Of a stretch of 64,000 nt of DNA, positions 958 through 61,593 are shown in pieces. Source of the DNA: Bispira polyomma (Eukaryota); the NCBI GenBank assembly GCA_965649765.1, contig OZ287752.1, forward strand, positions 79,670,001 through 79,734,000. Reading direction: 5' to 3'. A model generated the notes under the pieces. That model saw only the letters and a program-made list of their open reading frames with translations, had not been told where the DNA came from and ran no database searches. The position numbers and the translations under genes are program-made. Numbering within the stretch: position 1 is the first letter of the stretch; each line of letters opens with the position of its first letter.

Positions 958-3160
958 TGAAGAAATGAGGAAACCCCTAATACAGGAGTTGTGGAGCTCA
1001 GCAAATGCCCTTCGGATAGCTGCCTTGTGCAAAACGTTAGACAGTTGTGGCGATGTCAACCTTGCTAACCCATCTCCAATACCAAATACACTTTGCATGT
1101 CTGTGAGTAAACATATACCTGCCAGAGTCAAAGATGAACCTTGTTTTGATGACCATGACTTGTTAGACACTAGTGAGGTGGTAAGGCTAGGCAAAGTAAA
1201 TAAACAAACTGGCTTGGAATCAATGTTCAATTGCACATTGAGTAATATATTAAAAGAAGAAAGTGCCAGATTTATTTGCAATAGAGCCAATCCAAATCAT
1301 GCAACTGCTGAAAATGGGGGACTTAGTGACACTGCATTGATTAAAGTAGAATCCATTGAAAAAAACTGGCCTGTATCTGAAAATGGCACAGACATGGCTG
1401 ATGGTGATTCTGATGATACCATAGAATACTTTTCTGATGATAAACTTTCACAGGTGAAGAGCCATGGTAAATTGCAGACTTCTCCTAAGAGAGCAAGAGT
1501 CAGCAAGAATAAAAGTGGACATAAATCAGAAAGAAGAAGTGCTAAAAGTCCACGGAAAAGTATAGATAGTGTGAAGTTGAAACGCACGAGTGTTAAGGGT
1601 GTAAAATTAGAAAGGCACTTAGGAGACATGAAGTCAAAATGTGCTTATTGTGGTATGATATCTTATCACAGAAGAGTAAGAAAACATACATACGAGCAGC
1701 ATTATGATGAGTTTGTGCCAAAAGAATCTGAGGAAACTTCAGATGTTCATTGCAAAAAGCCGTTAAAAATCAGGTGTTTGAGCTGTGGGGAAGAGGTAGA
1801 AAGGCGGCACTATGCAGTGCATTTACTGACTGATCACCCCACTGACACTGTCAGAAAAACCAACCGAGGTAGACACTATAAAGTTAAAGTGGGCTGTTTG
1901 TTTTGTGACATTTCCATTAAGAATCTGAAGTATATGGAACACTTTGAACAGGTACACCCTGAAATGGGTTGTATGTTCAGTGAAACCAAATCAAATGTGG
2001 CAGCATCTAAATTCCTTGATCGTGTGAAGGTACCTGAAATTAAAAGAGTGGAGCATTTGATGATGTTTGCATGTGTCTATTGTGAAACAGATGAAATCAA
2101 AGTTACCTTCGAGGAGTATAAATCACATGTGTCGGAGTGCCATCCTAAGTTTTATGAAGTGAACATTAAGAACAAGCCCAATGTTACTCTTCATGATAAG
2201 ATTGAAACTGGCCTGGCAGAAATAACGGAGAACAAGGAAAAGATAGAAAAATCCAAATATCTTTATATAGATAGGAGTAGATACTTGCCAGAAGTGCCAC
2301 CACGTCCAAAAGAGTATGTCTGCTTCATATGTCAGCAGAAACTGCCTAATAGGAAGGCATACTACCAGCATGTAATGGACCAGCATGGGTTTAAGAAAAG
2401 AAAAACGTTGATGTGCCCATATTGTTATATATTTTTCTCTTGCCATCTGGCCAAAATAAATCATGAGGATGAGGCCCATGCCATTGAGAAATACATGTGT
2501 GAAACATGTGGCAAGGACTTTGTGCGGTCGTCTTCTCTGAAGATACACAAAGAACATGTGCACGTGGGCTATGTAAAGGAGTGCATGTTGAGGTACAAGC
2601 GGCGACCAAAGAACCTGCTGTGCAGCCATTGCGGTTCTCCATTCAAGACCACAACGAGTCTGAAGTACCACATCACAACAAAGCACAACAAGGAGAAGAA
2701 CTTTGTATGTTCCCAGTGTGACAAATCCTTCTCCAATTCCAGTGGACTCAAGAAGCACGAAATGACACACATGAGTGTCCAGAGCAGAAGGTTTTCCTGC
2801 ACGTTCTGCACATACAAAACCAACAGACGCCACGTCATGGAGTACCATCTGAGAATACACACTGGTGAGAAACCGTACAAGTGCAACTTGTGTGATTGCC
2901 GGTTTCGAATTAGTTTGACACTAAGGTGGCATCTGGAAAATAAACATGACATTAAAGAAACTGGTCAGGGAGTCTTTCATAAGTATTACCAGCCTGAACA
3001 TGGGCAGAAAAGTGAGGCAACAAGAATCATAGAGAGCATGTGTGTAGATTCTGAGGAAGATCTAGAAGTACCATTCTCAAGGACCACTGCAGATGATCAG
3101 GACATTGGACCAATGTCTGAGGACTTTGTTTTAAAAGAAGTAGAATTTCCCCAGTTTTAG
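958..3160 (+). CDS. Zinc-finger coding exon, copy 1 (BTB C-terminal helices + 4 atypical + 7 canonical C2H2 fingers)
   Basis: 731-aa ORF (ATG 965) with CxxC..HxxxH fingers and an HTGEKP linker. Preceded by CTGAC branch site (925-929), pyrimidine tract and CAG (AG 956-957); exon opens T-GAA-GAA-ATG (phase 2). Confidence 0.93.
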
Positions 3161-8609: not shown

Positions 8610-10788
8610 TGAAGAAATGAGAAAAACCCTAATACAGGAGTTGTGGAGCTCATCAAATGCCCTTCGGATACCTGCTTTGTGCAGAATGTTAGACAGTTGT
8701 GGCGATGTCAACCTTGCTTACCTATCTCCAATACAAAATGCTCTTTGCACATCTGTGAGTAAACATATACCTGCCAGAGTTAAAGATGAACCTTGTTATG
8801 ATGACCATGACTCGTTAGACACTAGTGAGTTAGCAAGACCAGACATAGTAAATAAACAAACTGGCTTGGAATCGATGACCAATTGCACATTGAGTAATAT
8901 ATTGAAAGAAGAAAGTTGCAATAAAGCCATACCAAATCATGCAACTGCTCAAGATGGGGGACCCAGTGACACTACATTGATTAAAGTTGAATCTTTTGAA
9001 AAGAACTGGCCTGTATCTGAAAATGGCACAGACATGGGTGGTAGTGATTCTGATAATACCATAGAATACTTTTCTGATGATGATGAGAGCGATGGTAAAT
9101 TGCAGACAATTCCTAAGAGAGCAAGGGTCAGCAAGAATAGAAGTAGACATAAATCAGAAAGAAGTGCTAAAAGTCCTCGTAAAAGTGTAGATAGCGCGAA
9201 AAGGAGAACATTGAAATGCAGGAGTGTTAAGGGTGTAAAAATAGATAGGCATTTAGGAGACATGAAGTCAAAATGTGCTTATTGTGGTAATATATCTTCT
9301 CACAGCTTGGTAAGAAGACATACATACGAGCAGCATTATGATGAATTTATGCCAAAAGAATCTGAAAAAACTTCAGATGTTCAGTGCAAAAAGCAGTTGA
9401 AAATCAGGTGTTTAAGCTGTCGACAAGAGGTAGAGAGGCGGCATTATGCAGTGCATTTACTGACTGATCACCCCACTAATACTGCCAGAAAAACTAATCG
9501 AGGTAGACACCATAAAGTCAAAGTAGGCTGTCTATTTTGTGACAGTTCCATTAAGAATCTGAATTACATGGAACACTTTGAACAGGTACACCCTGAAATG
9601 GGTTCTATGTTCAGTGAAACCAAATCAAATGTGACAGCATCCAAGTTCCTTGATCGTGTGAAGGTATCTGAACTTAAAAGAGTGGAGCATATGATGATGT
9701 TTGCATGTGTCTATTGTGAAACAGATGAAATGAAATTTACCTTTGAGGAGTATAAATCACACGTATTAGAGTGCCATCCAAACTTTTATGAAGTGAACAT
9801 TAAGAACATTTATACTCTTCGTGATAAAATTGAAACTGGCCTGGCAGAGAAAACTGAGAACAAAGAAACAATAGAAAAATCCAAGTATCTCTACATAGAT
9901 AGGAGTAGATACCTGCCAGAATTGCCCCCACGTCCCAAAGAGTATGTCTGCTTCCTGTGTCAGCAGAAAGTGCACAATAGAAAGGCTTACTACCAGCATG
10001 CTGTGGACCAGCATGGGTTTAAGAAAAGAAGAACGTTTATGTGCCCATATTGTTATATCTTATTCTCATGCCATCAGACCAAAATGAACCATGAGGATGA
10101 GGCCCATGCTATTGAGAAATACATGTGTGAAACATGTGGCAAGGACTTTGTGAGGTCGTCTTCACTGAAGATACACAAAGAACATGTTCATTTGGGCTAT
10201 GTAAAGGAGTGTGTGCTGAGGTACAAGCGGAAGCCAAAGAACTTGCTGTGCAACCATTGCGGTTCTCCTTTCAAGACCACCAGAAGTCTGAAGTACCATA
10301 TCGCAACAAAGCACAGCAAGGAAAAGAATTTTGTATGTTCCCAGTGTAACAAATCCTTCTCTCATTCCAGTGGACTTAAGAAACATGAAAAGACACACTT
10401 AAGTGTCAAGAGCAGAAAGTTTTCGTGCACGTTCTGCACATTCAAAACCAACAGACGCCATGACATAAAGAACCATCTGAGAATACACACTGAGGAGAAA
10501 CCATATAAGTGCAACTTGTGTGATTGCCGGTTTCGAATTAGTTTGACACTAAGGTGGCATTTGGAAAATAAACACGATATCAAAGAAACTGGTCAGGGAG
10601 TCTTTCAGAAGTATTACCAGCCTGAACATGGGCAGAAAAGTGAGGCAACAAGAATTATGGAGAGCATGTATGTAGATTCTGAGGAAGATTTGGAAGTACC
10701 ATTCTCCAGAACCACTGCAGATGATCTGGACATTGGAACAATGTCTGAGGACTTTGGTCTGAAAGAAGTAGAGTTTCCCCAGTTTTAG
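8610..10788 (+). CDS. Zinc-finger coding exon, copy 2
   Basis: 723-aa paralog (ATG 8617); acceptor AG 8608-8609, phase 2. Small in-frame deletions; linker changed from TGEKP to TEEKP. Confidence 0.92.
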
Positions 10789-14184: not shown

Positions 14185-16372
14185 TGAAGAAATGAGGAAA
14201 CCCCTAATACAGGAGTTGTGGAGCTCAGCAAATGCCCTTCGGATAGCTGCTTTGTGCAAAATGTTAGAGACTTGTGATGATGTCAGCCTTGCTATCCCAT
14301 CTTCAATTCCAAATACACTTTGCACGTCTGTGAGTAAAGATATACCTTGCAGGGTCAAAGATGTACCTTGTAATGATGGCCATAACTTGTTAGACACTAG
14401 TGAGATAGCAAGGCTGGGCAAAGTAAATAAACAAACTGGCTTGGAATTGAAGTCCGATTACAAATTGAGTAATATATTGAAAGAAGAAAGTGCCAGATTT
14501 ATTTGCAATAGAGACATACCAAATCTTGCCACTGCTGAAAATGGTGAACCTAGTGACACTACATTGATTAAGGTAGAATCCTTTGAAGAAAGCTGGATTG
14601 TGTCTGAAAATGACACAGACATGGGTGGTAGTGATTCTGATGATACCATAGAATACTTTTCTGATGATAAACTTTCACAGGTGAAGAGCCATGGTAAATT
14701 GCAGACATCTTCTAAGAGAGCAAGGATCATCAAGAATAGAAGTAAACATGAATCAGAAAGAAGTGCTAAAAGTCCTTGTAAAAGTGTAAAAGGGAGAACA
14801 TTGAAACGCAGGAGTGTTAAGGGTGTTAAAAGGCATTTAGGAGACATGAAGTCAAAATGTGCTTATTGTGGTATGATATCATATCACAGGACAGTAAGAC
14901 ATCATACATACGAGCAGCATTATGATGAGTTTGTGCCAAAAGAATCTGAGGAAACTTTTGAAGTTCAATGCAAAAAGCCGTTAAAAATCAGGTGTTTAGG
15001 CTGTGGGATAGAAGTGGAAAGGCGGCGTTATGCAGTGCATTTACTGACTGATCACCCCACTGATACTGTCAGAAAAACTAATTCTGGTAGACACCATAAA
15101 GTCAAAGTAGGCTGTTTGTTTTGTGAAATCTCCATTAAGAATCTGAAGTATATGGAACATTTTGAACAGGTACACCCTGAAATGGGTTCTAAGTTCAGCG
15201 CAACCATTTCAAATGTGGCAGCGCCTAAGTTTCTCGATCGTGTGAACATTCCTGAAATTAAAAAAGTGGAGCATTTGATGATGTTTGCATGTGTCTATTG
15301 TGAAACAGATGAAATAAAACTCACCTTTGAGGAGTATAAATCGCATGTGTTACAGTGCCATCCTAAGTTTTATGAAGTGAACATTAAGAACATTTCTAAT
15401 CTTCATGATAAGATTGAAAGTGGCCTGGCAGGGAAAACAGAGAACAAGGAAAAGATAGAAAAATACAAGTATCTGTACATAGATAGGCGTAGATACCTGC
15501 CAGAAGTCCCACCACGACCTAAAGAGTACGTCTGCTTCCTGTGTCAGCAGAAAGTTCCTAATAGGAAAGCTTACTACCAGCATGCAATAGACCAGCATGG
15601 GTTTGAGAAAAGAAAAACGGTTATGTGCCCATATTGTTATATCTTATGCTCAAGCCATCACTCAAAATTAAATCATGAGGATGAGGCCCATGCCATTGAG
15701 AAATACATGTGTGAAACATGTGGCAAGGACTTTGTGAGATCATCTTCTCTGAAGTTACACAAAGAACATGTCCATTTAGGCTATGTAAAGGAGTGTGTGC
15801 TGAGGTACAAGCGGCAGCCGAAGAACTTGCTGTGCAGCCATTGCGGTTCTTCGTACAAGACCACCAAAAGTCTGAACTACCATATTGCAACAAAGCACAA
15901 TCAGGAGAGGAATTTTGTATGTTCCCAGTGTAACAAATGCTTCCTACATTCCAGTCATCTGAAGAAGCACAAAATGACACACATGAGTGCTAACAGCAAA
16001 AAGTTTTCTTGCTCGTTCTGCACATTCAAAACCAACAGACGCCATGACATGGAAAGCCATTTGAGAATACACACGGGTGAGAAACCATATAAGTGCAACT
16101 TGTGTGATTGCCGGTTTCGAATTAGTTTAACGCTAAGGTCGCACTTGGAAAATAAACATGATATTAAACAAACTGGTCAGGGAATCTTTCAGAAGTATTA
16201 CCAGCCTGAACATGGGCAGAAAAGTGAGGCAACAAGAATCCTAGAGAGCATGTGTGAGGATTCTGAGGAAGCCCTGGAATTACCATTCTCAAGGACCACT
16301 GCAGATGATCAGGACATTGTACCAATTTCTGAGCACATTGCTCTGAAAGACGTAGAATTCCCCCAGTTTTAG
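14185..16372 (+). CDS. Zinc-finger coding exon, copy 3
   Basis: 726-aa paralog (ATG 14192); acceptor AG 14183-14184, phase 2. Confidence 0.92.
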
Positions 16373-20054: not shown

Positions 20055-22206
20055 TGAAGAAATGAGGAAACCCCTAATACAGGAGTTGTGGAGTTCATCA
20101 AATGCCCTTCGGATACCTGCTTTGTGCAAAATGTTAGACAGTTGTGGCGATGTCAACCTTGCTAACCCATCTCCAAGAACAAATGCACTTTGCATGTCTG
20201 TGAGTAAACATATACCTGCTGGAGTCAAAGATGAACCTTGTAATGATGACCAGGACTCATTCAACACTAATGAGGTAGCAAGGCTAGGCATAGTAAATAA
20301 TGAAACTGGCTTGGAATCGATGTCCGATTGCAAATTGAGTAATATATTGAAAGAAGAAAGTGCCAGATTTATTTGCAGTAGAGCCATACCAGATCATGCA
20401 ACTGCTGAAAATGGGGGACCTAGTGACACTACATTGATTAAAGTAGAATCCTTTGAAAAAAACTGGTCTGTATCTGAAAGTGGCACAGACATGGCTGATA
20501 GTGATTCTGATGATACCATAGAATACTTTTCTGATGATAAACTTTCACAGGTGAAGAGACATGGTAAATTGCATACATCTCCTAAGAGAGCGGGGGTGGG
20601 CAGCAATAGAACTGGAAATAAGTCCGAAAGAAGAAGTGCTAAAAGTCAACGTAAAAGTGTGGATAGCATGAAAAGGAGAACATTGAAATGCAGGATTGTT
20701 AAGAGTGTAAAAATAGGAAGCCATTTAGGAGACATGAAGGCAAAATGTGCTTATTGTGGTATGATATCTTATCACAGGACAGTAAGACAACATACATACG
20801 AGCAGCATTATGATCAGTTTATGCCAAAAGAATCTGAGGAAGCTTCTGAAGTTCAGTGCAAAAAGCCATTGAAAATCAGGTGTTTAAGCTGTGGGGAAGA
20901 GGTAGAAAGGCGGCGTTATGCAGTTCATTTGCTAACTGATCACCCCACTGACACTGTCAGAAAAACTAATTATGGTAGACACCACAAAGTTAAAGTAGGC
21001 TGTTTGTTTTGTGACATTTCCATAAAGAATCTGAAGTATATGGAACACTTTGAACAAGTACATCCTGAAATGGGTTGTATGTTCAGTGATAAAACCAAAT
21101 CAAATGTGACAGCATCTAAGTTCCTTGATCGTGTGAAGGTATCTGAACTTAAAAGAGTGGAGCATATGATGATGTTTGCATGTGTCTATTGTGAAACAGA
21201 TGAAATCAAACTTACCTTTGAGGAGTATAAATCGCACGTGTTAGGGTGCCATCCTAAGTTTTATGAAGTGAACATTAAGAACATTTCTAATCTTCGTGAT
21301 AAGATTGAAACTGGCCTGGCAGATAAAACTGAAAACAAGGAAAAGATTGAAAAATCAAAGTATCTTTACATAGATAGGCGCAGATACCTGCCAGAAGTCC
21401 CACCACGTCCAAAAGAATATGTCTGCTTCCTGTGTCAGCAGAGAGTTCCTAATAGGAAAGCTTACTACCAGCATGCAATAGACCAACATGGGTTTGAGAA
21501 AAAAAAAACGGTTATGTGCCCATATTGTTATATCTTATTCTCAAGCCATTGTTCAAAATTAAATCATGAGGATGAGACGCATGCCATTGAGAAATACATG
21601 TGTGAAACATGTGGCAAGGACTTTGTGAGGGCGTCTTCTCTGAGGTTACACAAAGAACATGTCCATTTAGGCTATGTAAAGGAGTGTGTGCTGAGGTACA
21701 AGCGGAAACCAAAGAACTTGCTGTGCAATCAATGCGGTTCTTCATTCAAGACCACCTGGACTCTGAACTGCCATATTGCAACAAAGCACAATCAAGAGGA
21801 GAAGAATTTTGTATGTTCCCAGTGTAACAAATCCTTCTTACATTCCCGTTATCTGAAGAGGCATGAAAAGACGCACATTAGTGCTAACAACAGAAAGTTT
21901 TCCTGCATGTTCTGCACATTCAAAACCAATATGCGCCATGACTTGGAGAGCCATTTGAGAATACACACGGGTGAGAAACCATATAAGTGCAACTTGTGTG
22001 ATTGCCGGTTTCGAATAGGTTTGACACTAAGATGGCATCTGGAAAATAAACATGATATTAAACAGACTGGTCAGGGAGTCTTTCAGAAGTATTACCAGCC
22101 TGAACATGGGCAGAAAAGTGAGGCAACAAGAATCATAGAGAGCATGTATGTGGATTCTGAGGAAGATTTGGAATTACCATTCTCAAGGACCCCTGCAGAT
22201 AATTAA
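20055..22206 (+). CDS. Zinc-finger coding exon, copy 4 (C-terminal tail truncated)
   Basis: Acceptor AG 20053-20054, ATG 20062; the ORF-track start at 20035 lies in the pyrimidine tract. CAG>TAA stop about 20 codons early; all fingers intact. Confidence 0.9.
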
Positions 22207-24172: not shown

Positions 24173-26375
24173 TGATCAAATGAGGAAACCCCTAATACAG
24201 GAGTTGTGGAGCTCATCAAATACCCTCCGGATACCTACTTTGTGCAAAATGTTAGAGAGTTGTGGTGATGTCAACCTTGCTAATCCATCCCCAATACCAA
24301 ATGCACTTTGCATATCTGTGAGTAAACATATACCTGCCAGAGTCAAAGATGAACCTTGTAATGACGACCATTACTCATTCAACACTAGTGAGGTAGCAAG
24401 GCTAGGTATGGTAAATACACAAACCGACTTGGAATCGATGTCCGATTGCAAATTGAGTAATATATTGAAAGAAGAAAGTGCCAGATTTATTTGCAATAGA
24501 GCCATACCAGATCATGCAACTGCTGAAATTGGGGGACCTAGTGACACTACATTGATTAAAGTAGAATCCTTTGAAAAAAACTGGTCTGTATCTGAAAATG
24601 GCACAGACATGGGTGGTAGTGATTCTGATGATACTATAGAATATTTTTCTGATGATAAAATTTCACAGGTGAAGAGACATGGTAAATTGCAAACAACTTC
24701 TAAGAGAGCAAGGGTCAGTAAGAATAGAAGTAAACATGAATCAGAAAGAATTGCTAAAAGTCCACGTAAAAGTGTAGATCGTGTGAAAAGCAAAACATTG
24801 AAATGCAGGAGTGTTAAGGGTGTAAAAATAGGAAGGCATTTAGGAGACATGAAGTCAAAATGTGCTTATTGTGGTATGATATCTTATCATAGGACAGTAA
24901 GACAACATACATACGAACAGCATTGTGATCAGTTTATGCCAAAAGAATTTAAGGAAACTTCTGAAGTTCAATGCAAAAAGCCGTTAAAAATCAGGTGTTT
25001 AAGCTGTGGGAAAGAGGTAGAAAGGCGGCGTTATGCAGTGCATTTACTGACTGATCACCCCACTGACACTGTCAGAAAAACTAATTCTGGTAGACACCAT
25101 AAAGTCAAAGTAGGCTGTTTGTTTTGTGACATTTCCATTAAGAATCTGAAGTATATGGAACACTTTGAACAGGTACATCCTGAAATGGGTTCTAAGTTCA
25201 GCGAAACCATAATGAATGTGGCAGCTCCCAAGTTTCTTGATCGTGTAAACATTCCTGAAATTAAAAGAGTGGAGCATTTGATGATGTTTGCGTGTGTCTA
25301 TTGTGAAGCAGATGAAATCAAATTTACCTTTGAGGAGTATAAATTGCACGTGTTAGAGTGCCATCCTAAGTTTTATGAAGTGAACATTAAGAACATTTCT
25401 AATCTTCGTGATAAGATTGAAACTGGCCTGGCAGAGAAAACTGAGAACAAGGAAAAGATAGAAAAATCAAAGTATCTTTACATAGATAGGCGCAGATACC
25501 TGCCAGAAGTCCCACCACGTCCCAAAGAGTATGTCTGCTTCCTGTGTCAGCAGAAAGTTCCTAATAGGAAAGCTTACTACCAGCATGCAATAGACCAGCA
25601 TGGGTTTGAGAAAAGAAAGACTGTTATGTGCCCATATTGTTATATCTTATGCTCAAGCCATCACTCAAAATTAAATCACGAGGATGAGGCCCATGCCATT
25701 GAGAAATACATGTGTGAAACATGTGGCAAGGACTTTGTGAGATCATCTTCTCTGAAGTTACACAAAGAACATGTCCATTTAGGCTATGTAAAGGAGTGTG
25801 TGCTGAGGTACAAGCGGAAGCCAAAGAACTTGCTGTGCAGCCATTGCGGTTGTTCGTACAAAACCACAGCGAGGCTGAACTACCATATTGCGACAAAGCA
25901 CAATCAGGAGAGGAAGTTTGTATGTTGCCAGTGTAACAAAACCTTCTTACATTCCAGTCGTCTGAAGAATCACGAAAAGACGCACATTAGTGCTAACAAC
26001 AGAAAGTATTCCTGCACGTTCTGCACATTCAAAACCAACAGACGCCATGACATGGAAAGCCATTTGAGAATACACACTGGTGAGAAACCATATAAGTGCA
26101 ACTTGTGTGTATGTCGGTTTCGAATAAGTTTGACATTAAGGTGGCATCTGGAAAATAAACACGATATCAAAGAAACTGGTCACGGAGTCTTTCAGAAGTA
26201 TTACGAGCCTGAACATGGGCAGAAAAGTGAGGCAACAAGAATCGTAGAGAGCATGTGTGTGGATTCCGAGGAAGATCTGGAAGTACCGTTCTCTAGGACC
26301 ACCGCAGATGATCAGGACATTGGACCAATTTCTGAGGACTTTGGTCTAAAAGAAGTAGAATTTTCCCAGTTTTAG
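24173..26375 (+). CDS. Zinc-finger coding exon, copy 5
   Basis: 731-aa paralog (ATG 24180); acceptor AG 24171-24172; opens T-GAT-CAA-ATG (phase 2). Confidence 0.92.
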
Positions 26376-29138: not shown

Positions 29139-31314
29139 TGAAGAAATGAGGAAACCCCTAATACAGGAGTTGTGGAGCTCAGCAAATGCCCTTCGGATAC
29201 CTGCTTTGTGCAAAATGTTAAAGAGTTGTGATGATGTCAACCTTGCTATCCCATCTTCAATTCCAAATACACTTTGCATGTCTGTGAGTAAACATATACC
29301 TGCCAGAGTCAAAGATGAACCTTGTAACGACGACCATGACTCATTCAACACTAGTGAGGTAGCAAGGCTAGGCATAGTAAATAATCAAACTGGCTTGGAA
29401 TTGATGTCTGATTGCAAATTGAGTAATATATTGAAAGATGAAAGTGCAAGATTTATTTGCAATAGAGACATACCAAATCTTGCAACTGCTGAAAATGGGG
29501 GACCTAGTGACACTACATTGATTAAAGTAGAATCCTTGGAAAAAAGCTGGTCTGTATCTGAAAATGGCATAGACATGGGTGGTAGTGATTCTGATGATAC
29601 CATAGAATACTTTTCTGATGATAAACTTTCACAGGTGAGGAGACATGGTAAATTGCAGACATCTTCAAAGAGAGCAAGGGTCAGCAAGAATAGAAGTATA
29701 CACAAATCAGAAAGCAAAAGTGCTAAAAATCCACGTAAAAGTTTAGATCGTGTAAAAGGGAGAACATTGAAAAGCAGGAATGTTAAAGGTGTAAAAATAG
29801 AAAGGCATTCAGGAGACATGAAGTCAAAATGTGCTTATTGTGGTATGATATCTTACCACAGAAGAGTAAGACAACATACATACAAACAGCATTGTGATCA
29901 GTTTATGCCAAAAGAATCTGAGGAAGCTTCTGAAGTTCAGTTCAAAAAGCCATTGAAAATCAGGTGTTTAAGCTGTGGGGAAGAGGTAGAGAGGCGACAT
30001 TATGCAGTGCATTTACTGACTGATCACCCCACTAACACTGTCAGAAAAACTAATCGGGGTAGACACCATCAAGTCAAAGTAGGCTGTTTGTTCTGTGATA
30101 TTTCCATTAAGAATCGGAAGTATATGGAACACTTTGAACAGGTACACCCTGAAATGGGTTCTAACTTTAGCGAAACCAAATCAAATGTGGCAGTGCCCAA
30201 GTTCCTTGATCGTGCAAACATTAAAAGAGTGGATGGTTTGATGATGTTTGCGTGTGTCTATTGTGAAACAGATGAAATCAAACTTACCTTTAAGGAGTAT
30301 ATATCACACGTGTTAGAGTGCCATCCTAAGTTTGATGAAATTGACGTTAAAAAGATTGAAACTGGCCTGGCAGAGAAAACTGAGAACAAGGAAGAGATAG
30401 AAAAAGCCAAGTATCTTTACATAGACAGGAGTAGATACCTGCCAGAAGTCCCACAACACCCCAAAGAGTATGTATGTTTCCTGTGTGAGCAGAAAGTGCC
30501 TAATAGGAAGGCATACTTCCAGCATGCAGTGGACCAGCATGGGTTTAAGAAAGGAAAAATGGTTATGTGCCCATATTGTTATACGTTATTCTCAAGCTAT
30601 CTAACAAAAATAAATCACGAGGATGAGACCCATGCCATTGAGAAATACATGTGTGAAACATGTGGCAAGGACTTTGTGAGATCATCTTCTCTGAAGATAC
30701 ACAAAGAACATGTCCATTTGGGTTATGTAAAGGAGTGTGTGCTGAGGTACAAGCGGAAGCCAAAGAACTTGCTGTGCAACCAATGCGGTTCTTCATACAA
30801 GACCACCTGGAGTCTGAACTACCATATTACAACAAAGCACAATCAGGAGAGGAACTTTGTATGTTCCCAGTGTAAGAAAGCCTTCTCTCATGCCAATGGT
30901 CTCAGGAGACATGAAAAGACGCACATGAGTGCTAACAGCAGAAAGTTTTCCTGCACTTTCTGCACATTCAAAACCAACAGATGCATTGACATGAAGAGCC
31001 ATTTGAGAATACACACGGGTGAGAAACCTTATAAGTGCAACTTGTGTGATTGCCGGTTTCGAATTGGTTTGACGCTAAGGTCGCATCTAGAAAATAAACA
31101 TGATATTAAACAAACTGGTCAGGGAGTCTTTCAGAAGTATTACCAACCTGAACATGGGCAGAAAAGTGAAGCAACAAGAATCCTAGAAAGCATGTGTGTG
31201 GAATCTGAGGAAGATCTTGAATTGCCATTCTCAAGGACCCCTGCAGATGATCAGGACATTGGACCAATCTCTGAGGACTTTGGTCTGAAAGAAGTAGAAT
31301 TTCCCCAGTTTTAG
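29139..31314 (+). CDS. Zinc-finger coding exon, copy 6
   Basis: Acceptor AG 29137-29138, ATG 29146, phase 2; intact fingers, short in-frame deletions. Confidence 0.92.
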
Positions 31315-33528: not shown

Positions 33529-35725
33529 TGATCAAATGAGGAAACCCTTAATACAGGAGTTGTGGAGCTCAGCAAATACCCTTCGGATACCTGCTTTGTG
33601 CAAAATGTTAGAGAGTTGTGATGATGTCAACCTTGCTATCCCATCTTCAATTCCAAATACACTTTGCATGTCTGTGAGTAAACATATACCTGCTGGGGTC
33701 AAAGATGAACCTTGTAATGATGACCAGGACTCAATCAACACTAGTGAGGTAGCAAGGCTAGGCATAGTAAATAATGAAACTGGCACACCATCATTGTCCG
33801 ATTGCAAATTAAGTAATATATTGAAAGAAGAAAATGCCAGATTTATTTGCAATAGAGACATACCAAATCTTGCCACTGCTGAAAATGGGGGACCTAGTGA
33901 CACTACATTGATTAAAGTAGAATCCTTTGAAAAAAACTGGTCTGTATCTGAAAACGACACAGACATGGGTGGTAGTGATTCTGATGATACCATAGAATAC
34001 TTTTCTGATGATAAACTTTCACAGGGAAAGAGCCATGGTAAATTGCAGACATCTTCTAAGAGAGCAAGGGTCAGCAAGAATAGAAGTAAACATGAATCAG
34101 GAAGAAGTACTAAAAGTCCTCATAAAAGTGTCGATAATGTAAAAGGGAAAACATTGAAACGCAGGAGTGTTAAGGGTGTGAAAGTAGAAGGGCATTTAGG
34201 AGACATGAAGTCAAAATGTGCTTATTGTGGTATCATTTCATTTCACACCGTAGTAAGAAGACATACATATGAGCAACATTATGATCAGTTTATGCCAACA
34301 GAATCTGAGGAAGCCTCTGAAGTTCAGTGCAAAAAGCCATTGAAAATCAGGTGTTTAAGCTGTGGGGAAGAGGTAGAAAGGCGACATTATGCAGTGCATT
34401 TACTGACTGATCACCCCACTGACACTGTCAGAAAAACTGATCATGGTAGACACCTTAAAGTTAAAGTAGGCTGTTTGTTTTGTGAAATCTCCATTAAGAA
34501 TCGGAAGTATATGGAACACTTTGAACAGGTACACCCTGAAATGGGTTCTAAGTTCAGCGAAACCAAATCAAATGTGGCAGCTCCCAAGTTTCTTGATCGT
34601 GTAAACATTCCTGAACTTAAAAGAGTGGAGCATTTGATGATGTTTGCATGTGTCTATTGTGAAACAGATGAAATAAAATTTACCTTTGAGGAGTACAAGT
34701 CTCACGTGTTAGAGTGCCATCCTAAGTTTTATGAAGTGAATATTAAAAACATTTCTAATCTTCATGATAAGATTGAAACTGGCCTGGCAGAGAAAAGTAA
34801 GAAGAAAGAAGAGATAGAAAAAGCCAAGTATCTTCACATAGACAGGAGTAGATACCTGCCAGAAGTTCCACCCCATCCTAAAGAGTATGTCTGCTTCCTG
34901 TGTCAGCAGAAACTGCCTAATAGAAAGGCTTACTACCAGCATGCAATGGACCAGCATGGGTTTAAGAGAAGAAAAACTGTTATGTGCCCATATTGTTATA
35001 TCTTATTTTCAAGCCATCATACCAAAAGAAGCCACGAAGACGAAGCCCATGCTATTGAGAAGTACATGTGTGAAACATGTGGCAAGGACTTTGTGCGGTC
35101 GTCTTCTCTGAAGATACACAAAGAACATGTCCATTTGGGCTATGTACAAGAGTGTGTACTGAGGTACAAGCGGCAGCCAAAGAACTTGCTGTGCAATCAA
35201 TGCGGTTCTTCATTTAAGACCACCTGGAGGCTTAACTACCATATTGCAACGAAGCACAACAAGGAGAGGAACTTTGTATGTTCCCAGTGTGACAAATCCT
35301 TCTTACATTCGGCTAGCCTCAAGCAACACGAAAAGACGCACATTAGTGCAAACAACAGAAAGTTTTCCTGCACATTCTGTACATTCAAAACCAACAGACG
35401 CCATGACTTGGAGAGCCATTTGAGAATACACACTGGTGAGAAACCATATAGGTGCAACTTGTGTGATTGCCGGTTTCGAATTAGTTTGACGCTAAGGTCG
35501 CATCTGGAAAATAAACATGATATAAAACTTACTGGTCAGGGAGTCTTTCAGAAGTATTACCAGCCTGAACATGGGCAGAAAAGTGAGGCAACAAGAATTA
35601 TAGAGAGGATGTGCTTGGAATCTGAGGAAGGCCTGGAATTACCATTCTCGAGGACCACTGCAGATGATCAGGACATTGGACCAATTTCTGAGAATTTTCG
35701 TCTGAAAGAAGTAGAATTTCCCTAG
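33529..35725 (+). CDS. Zinc-finger coding exon, copy 7
   Basis: 729-aa paralog (ATG 33536); acceptor AG 33527-33528, phase 2; CAG>TAG removes the last 2 residues. Confidence 0.92.
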
Positions 35726-37492: not shown

Positions 37493-39923
37493 CTTTATGG
37501 ATGAATGCAGACTTATACAGGAGATAAAAGACTTAGTGACTGTTCTACAGGTTACAGAGATGCTTGAAAATATGCTTGAACATGTGATAAAAACTGCCAT
37601 GAAGGAAACCATGACCAAGCCATGTTCTATACAATTGGATAGGCTAACCACCGTATCATCAAGAAAGAACACTTCCAAGGAAGCCAGTGCTGTTAGTAGG
37701 GCTGTCGAAAATGTTGTGAAAAATATCAAGTCAGAATGTGGCGAAGCAGAGCAAGTTGGAGCAACAAAAGTCAAGCTAAAGAGAAGAATGTCGGACGATC
37801 CGACTAATGCTGAAACTGGTGGGAACGAAGAGATGAAGGAATTTATGGAAGATGCTTTGCAAGGCTCTGACTATCACAGTGATTCTAGTGACACAGTGGA
37901 CTATTTTTCCGATGACCCAGACTATGAGGTAACTAAGCCAAAGCCAAGAAAGCTGAAAAAGGCTGTCTTGAATGTGGCCACATTGGATTCAAATAGTACT
38001 ACTGAACCTATTGAATTGCCCAGCGGAACAGAGCCCAAATTACCAAAATCAAGTTTGGTAAAGGCAAAATGCAGTTTGTGTGGAATGATATCAAGATATG
38101 ACGTTATGAGAAGACATGTTTATGAGCAGCACTTGGATGAGTTTGTGCACAAGAAAAGTGTGGTCAAAGAGCTTGTAAAGATCAGATGTTTGGTGTGCAG
38201 AGAGGAAATCGCTAGAAACGATTATGATGTGCACCTGTTGCTTCAACATCCCGCCCCAGTGGAAAAGAAGACAAACCGCGGGCGCTACCACAAGATGAAA
38301 GTGGGCTGTTTGTACTGCAACATAGTCGTGAGAAATGTGTTCTATATGGAGCACTTAAAAAATGCTCATCCTGAAGAGGCACAGAAATTTGTGGAGCCAA
38401 AACCCAGGAGCATCGGTCCAAAGTTTGAACATGCTAGAGTGGGTGATGTCAATGCTGTCATTCATTTGTTATTTGTGACGTGTGTATATTGTGAAAACCC
38501 CACAGAAGTAAGTTGTGACCAGTACAAGGCCCATGTTCTCGAGTACCATCCAAATTATGCTGACGTACATATCAGTAACATCAACACCACCCGGGCAGTG
38601 CCAAATACTACACCCGATCAGATAGTAAGGCCTACCAAAGAGATGACCGAAAAAGCCAAGTATCTGTTTGTTGATAGAAGCAGGTATCTTCCTGAAAAAC
38701 CCCCTCCGCCGGACGTCTACGTCTGCAATCTTTGTGGTGAAGGATGTCGATATAGAAAGTACTTCTACGATCATGCCAGACAAAAACACGGCTTCAAGAA
38801 GGTCAATAGCTGTAATTTTTGCCACAAGCTGTTCAGAACTGGGGCAGAAAAGATAAACCATGAAGACGAGAACCACGCAAAAGAAAAGTACTTGTGTGAA
38901 ACTTGTGGGAAGGACTTTGTAAGGTCAACATCTCTGAAAATTCACAAGGCAAATGTTCACCTTGGCCTGATACGAAACTGTGAACTCTTCAAGAAGAAGC
39001 CTTTGCGGAAGGAAAATCTGTTGTGTAGCTACTGTGGCGTATCCTACAACAGAGCGTCCAGCCTGGCAAACCATATTGCATCTAAGCACCATAAAGTGAG
39101 GAAGTTCAAGTGTAACTTCTGCAACAAGGCTTTTTTTAGCAGCAGTTCCATGCGGACGCATAAAAAAATACACATGGAAGTCACAAAGAGGAAGTATGCC
39201 TGCCCATTCTGCTCGTACAGAAATAACAGACGCCATGTGATGCACGCCCACCTGAGAATCCACACTGGTGAGAAGCCTTTTAGGTGCAGCCTTTGTGGGA
39301 GTCGTTTTCGGATCAGTTTGACCCTCAGGTGGCACCTGGAAAATAAGCACGACATGAAACTAACCGGCCAAGGAGTCTTTCAGGAGTATTACGAGCCTGA
39401 AAACGGGGAACATAGTGAAGCCACCCGGATACTTGAGAGCATGCCCAGCGACTCAGAAGATGAAGAAGGTCTGAAGTTTAGCCTGGGAAAAGTAGACAAT
39501 ATGACACGAGAGGAGGAACTCAGCCAAGAAGAGATCGTCTTTATGGAAAACCACGAAGCTAAGATTGCCCATTCGTCTTCTGTGGCCGCCGCTGCCGCTG
39601 CTGCAACTACTAGTAGTAATAGTAGCAGTAGTACAACAACTGAGCTCAGGGAAGGGCAGAGGGCTGAGAGTCAAAGAGAAGAGTCGACCGCAGTCAAAAC
39701 TCTAATGGATAACTCTCTGAGTGGACAAGGTGACGAGCGCCTGCCATTGATGCATCCGCCAGTTTCTGAACAGTTGGAGGAGGTGACTGAAGCCTTCGAT
39801 AGTAGAAGGACCCAGCTTATGCACAACCAAGCCACTTCTAGTAGCCAGAATAGTGCCGAGAATGAACCGTCGTATTACCCCTATGCTGCAGTTTATCAGC
39901 CACCCTATAATATGTATTATTAA
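37493..39923 (+). CDS. Diverged zinc-finger coding exon, copy 8
   Basis: 808-aa ORF with the same 4+7 finger layout. Pyrimidine tract and CAG (AG 37491-37492); opens C-TTT-ATG (phase 2). N-terminus LIQEIKDLVTVLQVTEM; Ala/Ser/Glu-rich tail. Confidence 0.92.
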
Positions 39924-46858: not shown

Positions 46859-46932
46859 AATTTATATATTTACAGAGATGAAGAGCTGAATACAGAATTT
46901 ATATATTTACAGAGATGAAAAGCTGAATACAG
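46859..46932 (+). repeat. 37-bp tandem duplication spanning the copy 9 splice acceptor
   Basis: AATTTATATATTTACAGAGATGAA(G/A)AGCTGAATACAG twice. Confidence 0.95.
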
Positions 46933-49900
46933 ATATTGTGGATCTGTTGTTTGAAGTGCAAGTAAAGAATATTGCCCAGACTCTAGAAAATGCCACAAGA
47001 AAACTTAAACAAAAGACAAAAGGTCAAGCACCAGACGAGGAGGATGAAGAGACGGAAGATGAGATTCCGGCTGACTTTTCAGTGCCTCCCATAAAGGCAG
47101 AATCCCCAACTGATGGCTCTGAGTACAGCGAAGGGGACAATACAACTACCCGTGTAGTGGATAACAGGGGGTACTGTAGTCAAAGGGTAAAGGAGAGTAA
47201 TCAACTGATAAGTATCGATAAAGTGATTAAAGCAGAAAAGATCAATGTGAGTGAAGAAGAGGGAACCATCTCTGATGATGAGGAGGAGGTTGTTGAAAAG
47301 AAGAGACTCAAAAGAGGTGATTCAGTAAAAGGTAGATGTATCTACTGTGGTCTGGTGGCAACTCCGAACAGGTTGACATCACATATATATGAGCAACACT
47401 ATGAGGCAATTTTGTCTCAGGACGAAACATTATTCGATCACAATTTAAGTGACACCACAAGAATGGCCAACAAGGTAAAATGCTTGTCGTGTGATTCTGT
47501 TATTTTAAGGAAGTTCTTTGTGGGACATTTGGAGGCTCATCATTCTGAGAAACTTCTACCAGACGTCTCACTCACTAATTTAAGACTGAAAGTAATGTGT
47601 CTGATTTGTAAAGAGACTGTAGACCAAAATATTTATAGCGAGCACTTGAGAAAGGTTCATCCCAATGAAGGAAACAGTTTGGAAGAATTAATGAAGAAAC
47701 TGGTTAGTGGGGAAAAGCAGGCAGAGGGATTTAGAATGAAAGACGTTGAGGATATGTTATTGTTGGAATGTATATATTGTGACCGTGGCAATATCTTAAG
47801 ATGTAGGGATTATGACATGCATATACTTGGTACACATTCTCCAAACAGTGGGCTACAGAAGAAGAATAACAAGAAACAAACCCCTGAAAGTGAAGAGTAT
47901 AAAGGAAACAGGAAGAGGGCAAGAAAAAAAAGTACTAAAGGGGGAAGGAACACACGGAAGGTGACTAAGGTGCCTGCAAAACGGAAGAAACGCATTTCAA
48001 GTAACATAGAATCACTTCAATCAAACGTTGAGGAAATTGAAGAAGAACATTTAGCTTCACACATCTCCAAAAGCAAGGTTTTTAAGGAGGAGTCCATAAA
48101 TGATGGTTATTCTGATGATTCTAATGACACAGTATATTATGCTGGGGAAGATGATGATGAAATGTCAGTTGAAAACACAGCTACAGAGTTTGATGATATT
48201 AATAATGAACAGAACAAAGATCTGCCACCACAGCCAGTAAAAGGTCAGTGTCCCTATTGTGGCATGATCTCAGTGTATACAACAGTAAAAGTTCACATGT
48301 ACAAAACCCACTATGAGGAAATATTAGAAGAAGACGAGCCCGGCGGCATTGAGCGTTCCGATAAGAGAGTGTTGAAGGTTTTGTGCCAGCTGTGCAACAA
48401 GGAAGTGTTCAGGAAATATCTGCCCATTCATATGGGATCACAACATCCTGAATGTTACGATGGGGGTACAACGTGTACTGTAGATGTGGGCTGCCTTTTG
48501 TGTGACCAGACAATAAAGAATAGACAGTATCGTCCCCATTTAAAAGAGAAGCACCCGCAGATGTTGAAGAAGTTGGACATACTGGTAAGAAACACCGGTA
48601 CCAGTGGCACTGTAAAGTCAAAGAAAATAGACGAGACAGTCAGTTTCATGGAGATTAACTGCGTGTACTGCCCTGGTAACAAGACAATAAATTACATGAA
48701 GTACCGAGATCATGTGGGCTCCAGCCATCCAAGTTACAGTAAAATTATGGTCAATAATATCAGTATAGTCAAGAGGACACTGAATCCCAAGAAGCCAGTT
48801 GGTAAGAAAACCCAGAAGGTACCCAGAAATGCACCAAACCCTGTACTGCAGAAGAACAGGGAGTATCTAACGATTGACAGGGTTGCCTGCTTACCGCCGC
48901 TCCCGACTCCACCACGTGAGTACTACTGTGCGGCATGTGATGAGAAGTTCTTTACAAAGCGGAGCTACAAGAAACACGCCAGTGAAGTACACAACTATCC
49001 CAAAGACCATGTCTATGTGTGCAACTACTGTTACCAGTTGTTTGAAACTGTGGCCAAAGGTCAGAATCACGAAGATGAAGTGCATGCACTTGAAAAGTAT
49101 CAGTGCGAAACCTGCGGTAAGCTCTTTACCAGAGCGAGCTCATTGCGGATGCACAAGGAGTGCATTCATTTGGGTATCAAGCGGATTCGGAAAAGTCCTA
49201 GGAGGTTTCGAGATCATATCTGTAGTTATTGTGGGAAAATATTCAAATTGGCAGCGGTGCTGGAAAATCACATTATGAGAGCCCACAAGCATGAGAAGAA
49301 TATGTGTTGTGACGTGTGTGACAAAAGGTTCGTGGATAAATCCGAACTGACCAAGCACAAGTTGACCCACCTGGACAAGAAGGACTATAAGTATTCATGT
49401 GCGTATTGTTCCTATAAAGCCGTCAGGAAGCATATTATGGTCTACCACGAGAGGATCCATACTGGTGAAAAGCCTTACCTGTGTAACTTGTGTGGAAGCA
49501 GACATCGCATTGGGTTGACCTTCAGGAGTCACATGTTGAACAAGCATTGTGTAGAACTTCACGGCAGTGAGGACCACCAGAAATACTACCACCCAGAAAC
49601 ACCAGTCAGTCTGGGTGGAAACTTGATTGAGGATTTGAAGGAGCCCTCACCGGATATGGAAGATAAGCAGGAGCTGGAACAGTCCTGCCCTCCTGAGACC
49701 ATGCTTCCTTTGCCACCAGAAGAGAAACAAAAGTCTCCAGTGAGCAGCAGTAGTAGCAGAATCCAAGTGACCACTGATATACAACATTCCCAGCCTCCTG
49801 AAAGAAGTGTTCACATTCCAAAAGAGTTGCCCAGTCCAGTAGTGGAAAGGATTGATACAAACCTACCAAGTGAGCAGAGTATGGATATGCGTGTTCAAGG

Positions 49901-50234
49901 ACAGAGTATGCCGGTGGGGTACTTGAAGCCTCCTAGCAGCAGTAGTACATATCAAGCAGATACATTCCAACATTCCAATGTAGCACATTACAGTACAACA
50001 GGTTTCCCTCAGATGGCTCATTCAGATAGCTCTTTCCTCGATTACTCGCGCATGTCAAGCCTTCCTGCACAGGAATGGACTCACGATACAGCAGGTTTGT
50101 CCCTGGATAGGTTCAGTGAACTGAACCATCAAGCCTACAGGTACTACGCAAGCACGCTGCAAGGTAGCATGGACAAAGCGGGAAGGACGCAGCAAAACAA
50201 CCTTGGACCAAAAGACTACAGTGACCACCACTGA
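46913..50234 (+). CDS. Most diverged zinc-finger coding exon, copy 9 (atypical 4-finger block duplicated, about 15 fingers)
   Basis: About 1100-aa frame with no nearby ATG (track starts at GTG 46938). Acceptor TTTACAG (AG 46911-46912); opens A-GAT-GAA-AAG (phase 2). HTGEKP linker; Pro/Ser/Gln-rich tail. Confidence 0.92.
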
Positions 50235-55245: not shown

Positions 55246-55309
55246 GGGCGGGCTTGAATAACTCTGGTGAACCATATGACGTTTTCCCGCAATTATTTGA
55301 TCTATATAG
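55246..55309 (+). promoter_or_regulatory. Putative element promoter
   Basis: GGGCGGG (55246), TGACGT (55277) and TATATAG (55303), about 130 nt before the gag ATG. Confidence 0.4.
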
Positions 55310-55438
55310 CCCTCAGCATTGCTACACTCGAGGAGTATTCTGGTTGTGCCGTGTGTACCTGAAGCAAGTGAAGGGGGCCTGAGAGAATTGGACACAGAGT
55401 GGAGTAGTTTAAACACGTGCGATTTTAAGTCCGCCGAT

Positions 55439-56419
55439 ATGCCACGTGTAGGTAGTAAAACGCAAACTTCACAGAGTGAAGCTGTAACAGACACTGATAC
55501 AGTTGATCCATTACAAGACATTTTAAAAGGACTGGCTGCTATTACTGAACGTTTAGATTCTCAGGAAAAACGTTTAAAGAACCAGGAAGAGAAGTTGGTA
55601 TTACAGGAAGTGTCTAGATCCGGCCCGTCAGCGCAGAGTTCCACGAAGGCAGACAGAAGTCAGAAGGAAGACAGGACTGAGCTGCCATCCTTGGATTTGT
55701 TGAAATCCGACTCCCGTGTGCAGGCTGAGGTGGACAAGAGGCTGAGAGCATATCAGTACACTTCACGTACGGATGCCAAAGGTACGAATTCAGACAAGGT
55801 TATTAAATCAGGGCGATTTAGGGCGGGTATGCATGTCATTACACGTAATATTGCCTGGCCTCATGATTATTGTAGCCTCCCAGCAGGTGTCGTAAAGCAG
55901 CCTACTTACGACGATCTGAGTGCCCCTCAGTGGTTTCAGGGTTTACTGTTTTCTATACTCGAGGAAACTAGTAGTCAAAGAAAGAACAATATGTTATTGT
56001 ATTATACGAATCTAATGCAAGACGCAGTAGAACTATCCCTACCCACAGCCAAGAAGGCTCATGCCTTAGTCCTAACGGAAATGGAAAAAGGTAAGCTTGA
56101 TTGGGATAATACAGATTTAATAGACAAGGTCAGGGCTAGGGCTACGCAAAGGATAGTTACCCCGGCTAGCTATGGTTTTTCTGCAAAAAATCATGTAAAA
56201 GACAGTAATACTGAGACCAAGGCTGAGATCTGTAGATATTACAACAAAAATACTTGTAAATTCACGGAAGATCATGTTAAAGACGGGGTCATGTTCAATC
56301 ATGCATGTTCGTATTGTTTCAAAGTGGTAGGCAGGAAAATAGAGCATAGGGTAGTTAACTGTATGAGAAAGAAAAAGGAAAGTAACACAACCACAGACAG
56401 GCCTAATCAGCAGGTTTAA
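55439..56419 (+). CDS. gag: Gag-like ORF1
   Basis: First ATG 55439; coiled-coil-like N-terminus, KSGRFR motif, C-terminal CRYYNKNTC..H..HACSYC..H....C zinc finger. Confidence 0.8.
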   Translation: MPRVGSKTQTSQSEAVTDTDTVDPLQDILKGLAAITERLDSQEKRLKNQEEKLVLQEVSRSGPSAQSSTKADRSQKEDRTELPSLDLLKSDSRVQAEVDKRLRAYQYTSRTDAKGTNSDKVIKSGRFRAGMHVITRNIAWPHDYCSLPAGVVKQPTYDDLSAPQWFQGLLFSILEETSSQRKNNMLLYYTNLMQDAVELSLPTAKKAHALVLTEMEKGKLDWDNTDLIDKVRARATQRIVTPASYGFSAKNHVKDSNTETKAEICRYYNKNTCKFTEDHVKDGVMFNHACSYCFKVVGRKIEHRVVNCMRKKKESNTTTDRPNQQV

Positions 56420-59400: not shown

Positions 59401-60162
59401 CTAACTATACCACAGGAAAAAATTAAACAAATTAAAACAATATGTAAACAGTGGACCTATAAAACAACGGCCACCAAGCATCAACTCCAAAAACTCACTG
59501 GCAAATTGTTATATTTGCATAGGTGTGTTAAACCTGCGCGTTTATTTGTTAATCGAATTTTACAAGCTCTTAGGGACTCCTCTAAAAATGGTACTATTAA
59601 ATTATCACCAGAGTTCCATAGGGATATCAATTGGTTCAATGTATTTTTGGACAAATTTAATGGTTCAATAGAAATGCACATTGACGAAAGTAACCGTACA
59701 GAGCATGTATATGTAGATGCGTCGTTATTTGCTGTGGGTGCCAAGTATGGCAATAAAGTGTATACTCTGGACATACCAGAAGATATGAAATTGTATTTGA
59801 CAATTGTACATTTCGAAATGGCAAATGTGATGTTGGCCATAAGAACATGGGTAAAGCATTTTAATAAGAAGTGTGTCACAATTTGGTGTGATAATCTGGC
59901 AGTAGTAAACGTGCTAAATTCACATAAAATTAAAGATACATTTCTTATGGCATGTGCCAGAAGTATCTGGTTATTAATGGCCTCCTATGATATACAGGTT
60001 GAATTTAAACATATAAAAGGTGAAAGTAACACTTATGCGGATATTTTATCTCGCTGGTGCAACTACAGTATGAACGTAGACAACCCTTATGTTAGAAATT
60101 TATATAAATGCGAATGGTGGCAGTCAAAAGCTGCAGAATTATACCCTAATTGGCTTATTTAG
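56415..60162 (+). pseudogene. pol: Disrupted pol (RT + RNase H) with a long low-complexity N-terminal extension
   Basis: ORFs at 56968, 58843 and 59269 share one frame, split by TAA at 58768 and 59209. Motifs RVIIDLS, KVDIKRAFR, LPFG, YIDD (59230-59241), YVDAS, CDN, NTYADILSR. Probable frameshift at the A8 run 56978-56985. Confidence 0.88.
57352..57697 (+). repeat. 177-bp (59-aa) in-frame tandem duplication in the pol extension
   Basis: HTNYNSSIEYSAVHSSKDLSTHGFNHV..GFMETLN at 57352 and 57529. Confidence 0.92.
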
Positions 60163-60418
60163 ATACTAAATTTGTTCCCTTAAACCTTGCAGGCGATTGT
60201 ATCATTTGAAATAAGTTCGAAATAATATGTCAACTTTATTGCTACCTGCAAGGTTTTGTGAAGTTCCCTATTTCATTATATACTGGGTTTCATACTGTGT
60301 AAATGCATAAGTGTCTTTGACATGTATACTGCCTGTCCTGCTGTCTGAATTCGTTTGGCTCAGCAGGCAACAGGCGGAAATAAAGCAAAATTCTGCTCTC
60401 CGTCTGTTGTATTTTCAG

Positions 60419-61395: not shown

Positions 61396-61593
61396 TACAA
61401 CAACAATTTGGGTTTGGCAATTATAACACAAACAGATTTTAAATGCTACCCACTATAGGGATATACAAAGTATAAAAGTTTAAAATATGTGTAAATTTTC
61501 TAAGGCCGGGTTAGTCTTAGGCTCACACGTTGTAAAGTAATCCTAAAGGAAAACACCCACCTTAGTCAGCTAAGGGTGCTTAAGGTTTAATGT

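What the first reader, a model, noticed from the sequence alone, without database searches (positions are those of the whole stretch)
958..1050. Each variable exon carries only the last helices of a BTB/POZ domain
EEMRKPLIQELWSSANALRIPALCKMLES (consensus of copies 1-7), FMDECRLIQEIKDLVTVLQVTEMLEN (copy 8) and DEKLNTDIVDLLFEVQVKNIAQTLEN (copy 9) align by eye, without gaps, to the BTB C-terminal pattern nv.ell.aA..Lqi..L...c. In the known insect loci the whole BTB is constant. Here the C-terminal helices would differ per isoform. In ZBTB-type BTBs that region contributes to the dimer interface, so exon choice could couple DNA specificity to dimer or co-repressor preference (inference).
Basis: partly seen in the sequence, partly recalled or inferred. 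Interest (0 to 1): 0.8.

Follow-up and report, generated by a model that had tools for sequence, protein, structure and literature searches.

The report
Worm BTB gene, swappable end helices
One gene of a marine worm appears to build ten different zinc-finger transcription factors from a shared front part plus one of ten alternative last exons, and, unlike similar insect genes, the splice point falls inside the pairing (BTB) domain, so each version gets its own last two helices; no RNA has yet shown the splicing.

Summary
Confirmed and completed. Two single-copy exons 12 and 10 kb upstream of the window encode the BTB N-terminus up to Pfam position 78 of 110 and end in a phase-2 donor. Ten tandem terminal exons follow (nine in the window, one just upstream). 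All have phase-2 acceptors and begin with the missing two BTB helices, then a linker and about 11-15 Cys/His fingers. Alone, the helices miss Pfam and PDB. Against two independent BTB proteins, copies 1-8 rank 1-7 and 9 of 39,741 window peptides; copy 9 is weak (rank 44) but conserved. A second species has the same layout, and a third has one such exon.

The coupling idea is only partly supported. The main dimer interface lies in the constant exons; only the last helix reaches the partner. Helices form four old classes (5-50% identical), while recent copies 1-7 share near-identical helices but differ in finger recognition residues. Exon choice most likely switches DNA specificity first; helix class may tune the beta1-alpha6 surface. 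Probably an annelid; a non-Tramtrack parallel of lola. No RNA available. The scan noted this locus and a similar split-domain BEN array in this genome before.

The parts
958..3160 (+). Variable exon 1: phase-2 acceptor, BTB end helices (core 980-1045), linker, atypical fingers (about 1628-2494), C2H2 array, stop. Three further parts lie upstream, outside the window: constant exon A (G000:C5:79657716-79657877), constant exon B (C5:79659980-79660083, phase-2 donor) and variable exon 0 (C5:79665741-79667865)
   Evidence: exon A Pfam BTB 4-38, E 1.8e-8, exon B 53-78, E 0.067; exon 0
980..1045 (+). 22-codon helix-turn-helix core (BTB A4-A5 = alpha5-alpha6) of copy 1; the finding itself
8610..10788 (+). 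Variable exon 2 (class I; helix core 8632-8697)
14185..16372 (+). Variable exon 3 (class I; core 14207-14272)
20055..22206 (+). Variable exon 4 (class I; core 20077-20142); tail about 17 codons shorter than its sisters'
24173..26375 (+). Variable exon 5 (class I; core 24195-24260)
29139..31314 (+). Variable exon 6 (class I; core 29161-29226)
33529..35725 (+). Variable exon 7 (class I; core 33551-33616)
37493..39923 (+). Variable exon 8 (class II; core 37515-37580); this class is expanded to at least 9 copies in species B
46913..50234 (+). Variable exon 9 (class III; core 46926-46991); most conserved exon, with an extra atypical finger block; first Met only at residue 184
46859..46933 (+). 37-nt tandem duplication of the copy 9 acceptor; the upstream copy (exon start 46876) meets a stop after 13 codons

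Best explanation
One BTB-zinc-finger gene with two constant coding exons and ten mutually exclusive terminal exons. SHOWN at DNA level: the constant exons cover Pfam BTB 4-78 and end in phase 2; each terminal exon starts in phase 2 with the last two BTB helices; the layout is conserved in a second species. INFERRED: the exon B donor is spliced to one acceptor per transcript (junction codon Asp or Glu) and the transcript ends after that exon's stop, giving BTB-ZF proteins of about 800-1,200 aa. Origin (inferred): the ancestral gene had an intron between the beta5 strand and helix A4, so duplicating its last exon carried the two helices along. The helices stayed under folding constraint (buried hydrophobic positions kept) while surfaces drifted into four old classes. 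Recent, lineage-specific expansions diversified the recognition helices of three C2H2 fingers instead. So exon choice mainly switches DNA-binding specificity, as in lola. All isoforms keep the core dimer interface and probably can pair with each other; helix class may secondarily change the beta1-alpha6 surface (stability, E3 or co-repressor binding). Odds: about 0.87 for the architecture, about 0.3 that helix class is functionally selective.
For: A single exon A in the genome, exactly ten variable exons, all in this cluster, and no BTB exon between them. Of 48 strong acceptors in the window, the eight followed by ORFs over 300 codons are all in the donor's phase; all 21 exons examined in three species are too. 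No better 'helix exon' in the intron after exon B in species A; in species B (intron partly covered) the best intronic score is 23 against 40 for the first variable exon. The helices lie upstream of the first Met in copy 9 and its orthologue (Met 184 and 118), in four species B class II copies (Met 44-81) and in species C (Met 27), yet copy 9's core keeps pN/pS 0.22 across species. The only cross-species noncoding conservation upstream of the exons is branch point, pyrimidine tract and CAG. Spacing from the YxG motif to the core is 10 residues in class III, equal to the natural protein P0071, and 12-15 in the others. Among copies 1-7, recognition positions of fingers 2-4 are 51% identical (pN/pS 0.83) against 77-83% for the finger scaffold.
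Against: No RNA run holds the locus and the three runs laid were DNA, so no junction is observed. No spliced full-length relative was found among 1.84 billion representatives. Variable N-termini have no Pfam or PDB hit on their own. Class I and II helices evolve fast (pN/pS 0.5-0.6 between species; 1.07 among copies 1-7, on very few changes), so some may be relaxed. Copies 0-8 have a Met within 8 codons and could also be made as BTB-less proteins.
Confidence: 0.85

Rival explanations
1. Selective coupling: each helix class gives the BTB its own dimer, co-repressor or E3-ligase preference, and selection keeps helix class and finger set together.
For: Classes are only 5-50% identical in the core, mostly under 25%, and classes I-III are each kept in two species. 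A5/alpha6 is in the ZBTB interface (PMC9468604). An alpha6 swap switches FBXO22 binding between BACH1 and BACH2 (PMC11185555).
Against: The main interface elements are constant (PMC1257465, mapped). No correlation between helix and recognition-residue differences in either expansion (rho -0.14 and 0.07). Copies 1-7 share near-identical helices. The class 0 exon appears decayed in species B.
Confidence: 0.3
2. Independent BTB-less zinc-finger genes: only one exon is spliced to the BTB exons; the others are tandem gene copies with their own promoters and vestigial helices.
For: Copies 1-8 have an ATG at codon 2-3. About 0.5-0.7 kb upstream of the acceptors is shared among copies 1-7. No RNA evidence either way.
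Against: Many orthologous exons have no Met before or within the helices. Acceptors are conserved while neighbouring intron is not. The hydrophobic pattern is kept in all lineages. The exon nearest the BTB exons is decayed in species B while more distant ones are intact.
Confidence: 0.1
3. Same products, but made partly by trans-splicing from separately transcribed variable exons, as in mod(mdg4) and lola.
For: Known for the insect analogues (PMC4387717). The array spans about 60 kb here and about 170 kb in species B, with possible poly(A) signals after every exon.
Against: All exons lie on one strand downstream of the donor, so cis-splicing suffices. No conserved intronic element after exon B between species. 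Only one 9/11 U1-complementary site in each intron, at unrelated positions.
Confidence: 0.12

Closest known systems
Drosophila lola (also mod(mdg4), broad, fruitless, tramtrack)
   Same: Constant BTB-coding 5' exons joined to one of many zinc-finger 3' exons (PMC1947980, PMC11426971).
   Different: In lola the BTB is in the common region; here the splice point is inside it. No FxLRWN Tramtrack motif in exon A, and that motif is reported absent from annelids (PMC11426971). Variable exons carry about 11-15 fingers, whereas insect isoforms carry few (own knowledge). All exons are on one strand and trans-splicing is not indicated. Non-TTK BTB-C2H2 genes of Drosophila have one isoform each (PMC11426971). 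Probably convergent.
ZBTB/POK factors (PLZF, BCL6, Miz1, Kaiso, ZBTB8A) and BACH1
   Same: Long-form N-terminal BTB, linker, C-terminal C2H2 array. Exon A and B best PDB hits include SPOP, Miz1/NAC1, ZBTB9, Kaiso and ZBTB8A.
   Different: One BTB core with four kinds of A4-A5 hairpin. The basic residue of the charged pocket is Ser in both species (AHS). An atypical Cys/His finger block with no relatives beyond three species.
Domain-splitting alternative exons (FGFR IgIIIb/IIIc, Dscam1 half-Ig exons; own knowledge)
   Same: Alternative duplicated exons supply one part of a folded domain.
   Different: Those are internal cassettes in extracellular Ig domains; here they are terminal exons that tie part of a dimerisation domain to a whole DNA-binding array.

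Membership tests
BTB/POZ domain (PF00651) | N-terminal and central core (B1-B2-A1 to A3-beta5) | tested here: met
   Exon A Pfam 4-38, E 1.8e-8, above cut-off; exon B 53-78, E 0.067, and 45-78, E 0.018, in species B
BTB/POZ domain (PF00651) | C-terminal helices A4-A5 (Pfam about 79-110) | tested here: met
   Not by direct Pfam/PDB search, but by hhalign to P0071, rank tests, spacing and predicted helix-turn-helix; weakest for copy 9
BTB/POZ domain (PF00651) | Whole-domain match or fold of the joined protein | not tested
ZBTB/POK | Long-form BTB at the N-terminus, linker, C-terminal C2H2 array | tested here: met
   About 25 residues precede the CD motif; Pfam zf-C2H2 in the variable exons; depends on the inferred splicing
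ZBTB/POK | Charged pocket: Asp at the start of B1 plus Lys/Arg at the start of A1 (PMC9468604) | tested here: not met
   Asp present; the basic position is Ser in both species
ZBTB/POK | BTB homodimerisation, co-repressor binding | not testable with these tools
   Monomer prediction only; needs biochemistry
Tramtrack-group BTB (lola, mod(mdg4)) | N-terminal FxLRWN motif | tested here: not met
   Absent from exon A in both species (PMC11426971)
lola-like alternative 3' exon locus | Single constant BTB region with many in-phase terminal finger exons | tested here: met
   species B
lola-like alternative 3' exon locus | Entire BTB in the constant exons | tested here: not met
   Constant part ends at Pfam 78/110; no hidden helix exon found
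lola-like alternative 3' exon locus | Transcripts joining constant to several variable exons | not testable with these tools
   No RNA run on record
mod(mdg4)/lola trans-splicing | Conserved U1-binding pseudo-donor in the last common intron; exons on both strands | tested here: not met
   one species pair only, species B intron partly covered

The most novel reading that the evidence does not exclude
A single gene builds several structurally distinct BTB domains by splicing: one invariant core packs against four very different alpha5-alpha6 hairpins, and hairpin class sets which isoforms pair or which co-repressor or ubiquitin ligase they meet, linked in the same exon to a distinct zinc-finger DNA specificity. 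It would be a natural domain-swap experiment on BTB partner choice, evolved independently of insect lola.
Probability: 0.27. Interest if true: 0.8.

Novelty: new variant of a known kind. Interest (0 to 1): 0.6.

Why it matters
BTB genes with many alternative zinc-finger ends are described as a hallmark of arthropod Tramtrack-group genes. A non-Tramtrack example in a probable annelid would show that the design arose twice. Splitting the BTB itself gives natural chimeras that isolate the last two helices on a fixed core. How ZBTB domains choose homo- versus heterodimers, and how the beta1-alpha6 surface is read by co-repressors and E3 ligases, are open questions, and four hairpin classes on one core make them directly testable. 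Lineage-specific exon expansions (class I seven times here, class II at least nine times in species B) with fast-changing recognition residues resemble KRAB-ZF-type turnover inside one gene (inference).

Tried and rejected
Pfam scans of single variable N-termini and PDB profile searches: no BTB hit, only chance coiled-coil matches. hhalign against the lizard BTB P0090: no alignment. Word search with exon A: no candidates. RNA search: no RNA holder; the reads laid were DNA, and their joints were repeat artefacts without GT-AG ends. ESM Atlas on the atypical finger block: only generic C2H2 clusters. The big profile search gave four true relatives, all unspliced genomic ORFs; insect hits share only finger patterns. 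Rejected: a separate BTB exon set per copy; a hidden constant helix exon; ZAD or KRAB upstream exon; Dscam-type docking/selector complementarity (none at E 0.01); strong donors early in the variable exons (none of 9/11 or better); more copies elsewhere. Five paper searches for a split-BTB or non-arthropod lola-like locus found none; the library is incomplete.

Full report
Setting. The window is G000:C5:79670001-79734000 of a 1.035 Gb genome. The neighbouring SIK kinase exon has its best named hits in Paralvinella and Capitella and groups with them in a quick tree with support of 85-89, so the animal is probably an annelid. An earlier scan note calls it a fan worm; I did not test that. The window holds nine long single-exon ORFs on the + strand, each with about 11 Cys/His finger motifs (15 in the last) by a loose pattern and Pfam C2H2 hits.

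The constant part (outside the window). A Pfam BTB scan of the whole genome hit C5:79657773-79657880, 12 kb upstream, on the same strand. The fetched DNA shows exon A (C5:79657716-79657877; ATG, 54 codons, phase-0 donor) and exon B (C5:79659980-79660083; 104 nt, phase-2 donor GA|gtaagt). Exon A matches Pfam BTB 4-38 (E 1.8e-8) and exon B 53-78 (E 0.067). Exon B's orthologue aligns to ZBTB8A residues 68-91, ending just past the YxG motif. About 30 profile positions, the last two helices, are missing. Exon A is single-copy. A tenth variable exon (copy 0, C5:79665741-79667865) lies between exon B and the window. Whole-genome searches find exactly ten variable exons, all here.

Phases. Every variable exon has one base before its first full codon, which completes the donor's GA to Asp or Glu. 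Of 48 strong acceptors on the window's + strand, the eight followed by ORFs above 300 codons are copies 1-8, all in this phase; copy 9 has a weaker, AT-rich acceptor. The copies share descent, so the phase match counts about once (1 in 3 by chance), not ten times.

Are the N-termini BTB helices? By direct search, no: Pfam and PDB give nothing, as expected for 30 residues. Two natural full-length BTB-ZF proteins turned up among the finger hits and were identified through exon A alone: P0071 (Logan contig, Pfam 8-107) and P0090 (lizard). hhalign placed the N-terminal alignment on P0071 residues 110-134 (E 4.3e-4), the stretch that aligns to the last two helices of Miz1 and ZBTB9; it failed on P0090. 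In 15 of 20 exons the N-terminal window is the best of about 700 windows against P0071's helices, and it is within the top 5 in the rest. Across both strands of the window, copies 1-8 rank 1-7 and 9 of 39,741 peptides, copy 9 ranks 44, and leave-class-out scoring ranks all ten tested N-termini first in their exons. Hydrophobic residues are kept at core positions 1, 4, 8, 11, 13, 16, 17 and 20 in 8-9 of 9 representatives. AlphaFold2 gives two helices with the turn at the L-Q/R-I motif. No better candidate exon was found in the intron after exon B.

Other species. An ENA contig (ERZ22147071, ctg30993l; unnamed animal, species B) carries the SIK orthologue, exon A (76% identical), exon B (88%, same phase-2 donor), a decayed copy-0-like remnant (weak, E 0.002), one class I exon, at least nine class II exons and one class III exon, in the same order; two gaps were not sampled. 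A 3.9 kb contig from a third sample has a phase-2 exon with clearly BTB-like helices. Upstream of the exons, only branch point, pyrimidine tract and CAG are conserved between species. In copy 9, its orthologue, four class II copies and species C the helices lie before the first Met, and copy 9's core has pN/pS 0.22, so they must be translated from an upstream exon. No further relatives appeared among 1.84 billion representatives.

What varies. The helix cores form four classes: 0, I (copies 1-7), II (copy 8) and III (copy 9). Identity is 50% between 0 and I and 5-23% between other pairs. Within copies 1-7 the cores are 85% identical, while recognition positions of C2H2 fingers 2-4 are 51% identical with pN/pS 0.83, against about 0.3 for the finger scaffold; helix and recognition differences do not correlate here or in species B. 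This shows faster change at recognition positions, not proof of positive selection. Copy 9's C2H2 array is 96% identical between species, so it may be the ancestral form (inference). Class I and II helices change two to three times faster than constant exon A, class III no faster; synonymous rates near the acceptors are low, which inflates their ratios.

Mechanism. In PLZF and BCL6 the interface is the beta1-beta5 sheet plus alpha1 against alpha1 and A1/A2 (PMC1257465); by alignment all of these fall in exons A and B (inference). A wider survey adds A5 (PMC9468604). In BACH1, beta1 runs along alpha6 of the partner, an alpha6 swap with BACH2 switches FBXO22 binding, and an NCOR1 fragment competes for the site (PMC11185555, preprint). 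So all isoforms should share the dimer core, while the variable hairpin alters one peripheral, biologically used surface. The simplest origin is duplication of a last exon whose intron happened to sit inside the BTB; several other BTB hits in this genome also end near profile positions 75-79 (not examined). I put the architecture at about 0.87 and functional selectivity of hairpin classes at about 0.3. Splicing is inferred: no RNA run was available.

Comparison. It works like lola: common BTB exons plus alternative finger exons (PMC1947980). It is not a Tramtrack-group member (no FxLRWN; PMC11426971), lacks the basic charged-pocket residue, shows no sign of the mod(mdg4) trans-splicing element (PMC4387717), and splits the BTB. 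I found no paper describing this. Verdict: real; a new variant of a known kind; interest 0.6.

Noticed in passing
window 46859-46933: 37-nt duplication of the copy 9 acceptor, absent in species B; the upstream twin leads to a stop after 13 codons and could lower copy 9 output.
   Followed up: partly
window about 55300-61700: DIRS-like retrotransposon remnant (YIDD reverse transcriptase motif, RNase H-like, tyrosine recombinase; Pfam hits), with stops between segments.
   Followed up: no
window 62565-63768: 169-bp tandem repeat, 7.2 copies; a similar-looking repeat lies in the species B intron after exon B.
   Followed up: no
window 1628-2494 and homologous blocks; doubled in copy 9 (about 47325-47880 and 48237-49100): Atypical Cys/His finger block ahead of the C2H2 array, with invariant ligands, found in only three species in a search of 1.84 billion proteins.
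   Followed up: partly
L026 reverse strand about 15250-16180 (species B): Decayed copy-0-like exon with stops, suggesting birth and death of exons in the array.
   Followed up: partly
G000:C5:79624614-79627319: Large SIK kinase exon 30 kb upstream of exon A; its orthologue is on the same species B contig (synteny).
   Followed up: partly
L002:7716-7877 and L027:2091-2252: The basic residue of the BTB charged pocket is Ser in both species.
   Followed up: no
G000 C10:30999481, C10:6999256, C10:25209754, C1:36078354, C4:26218708: Other BTB hits stop at profile positions 75-79; they may share this intron position and could be checked for similar exon arrays.
   Followed up: no
L030 (Logan SRR29645014), P0071: Intronless or spliced BTB-ZF protein whose BTB resembles exon A (E 1.3e-10 in a local search) and has the same short central loop; possibly the same subfamily without a known array.
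   Followed up: partly
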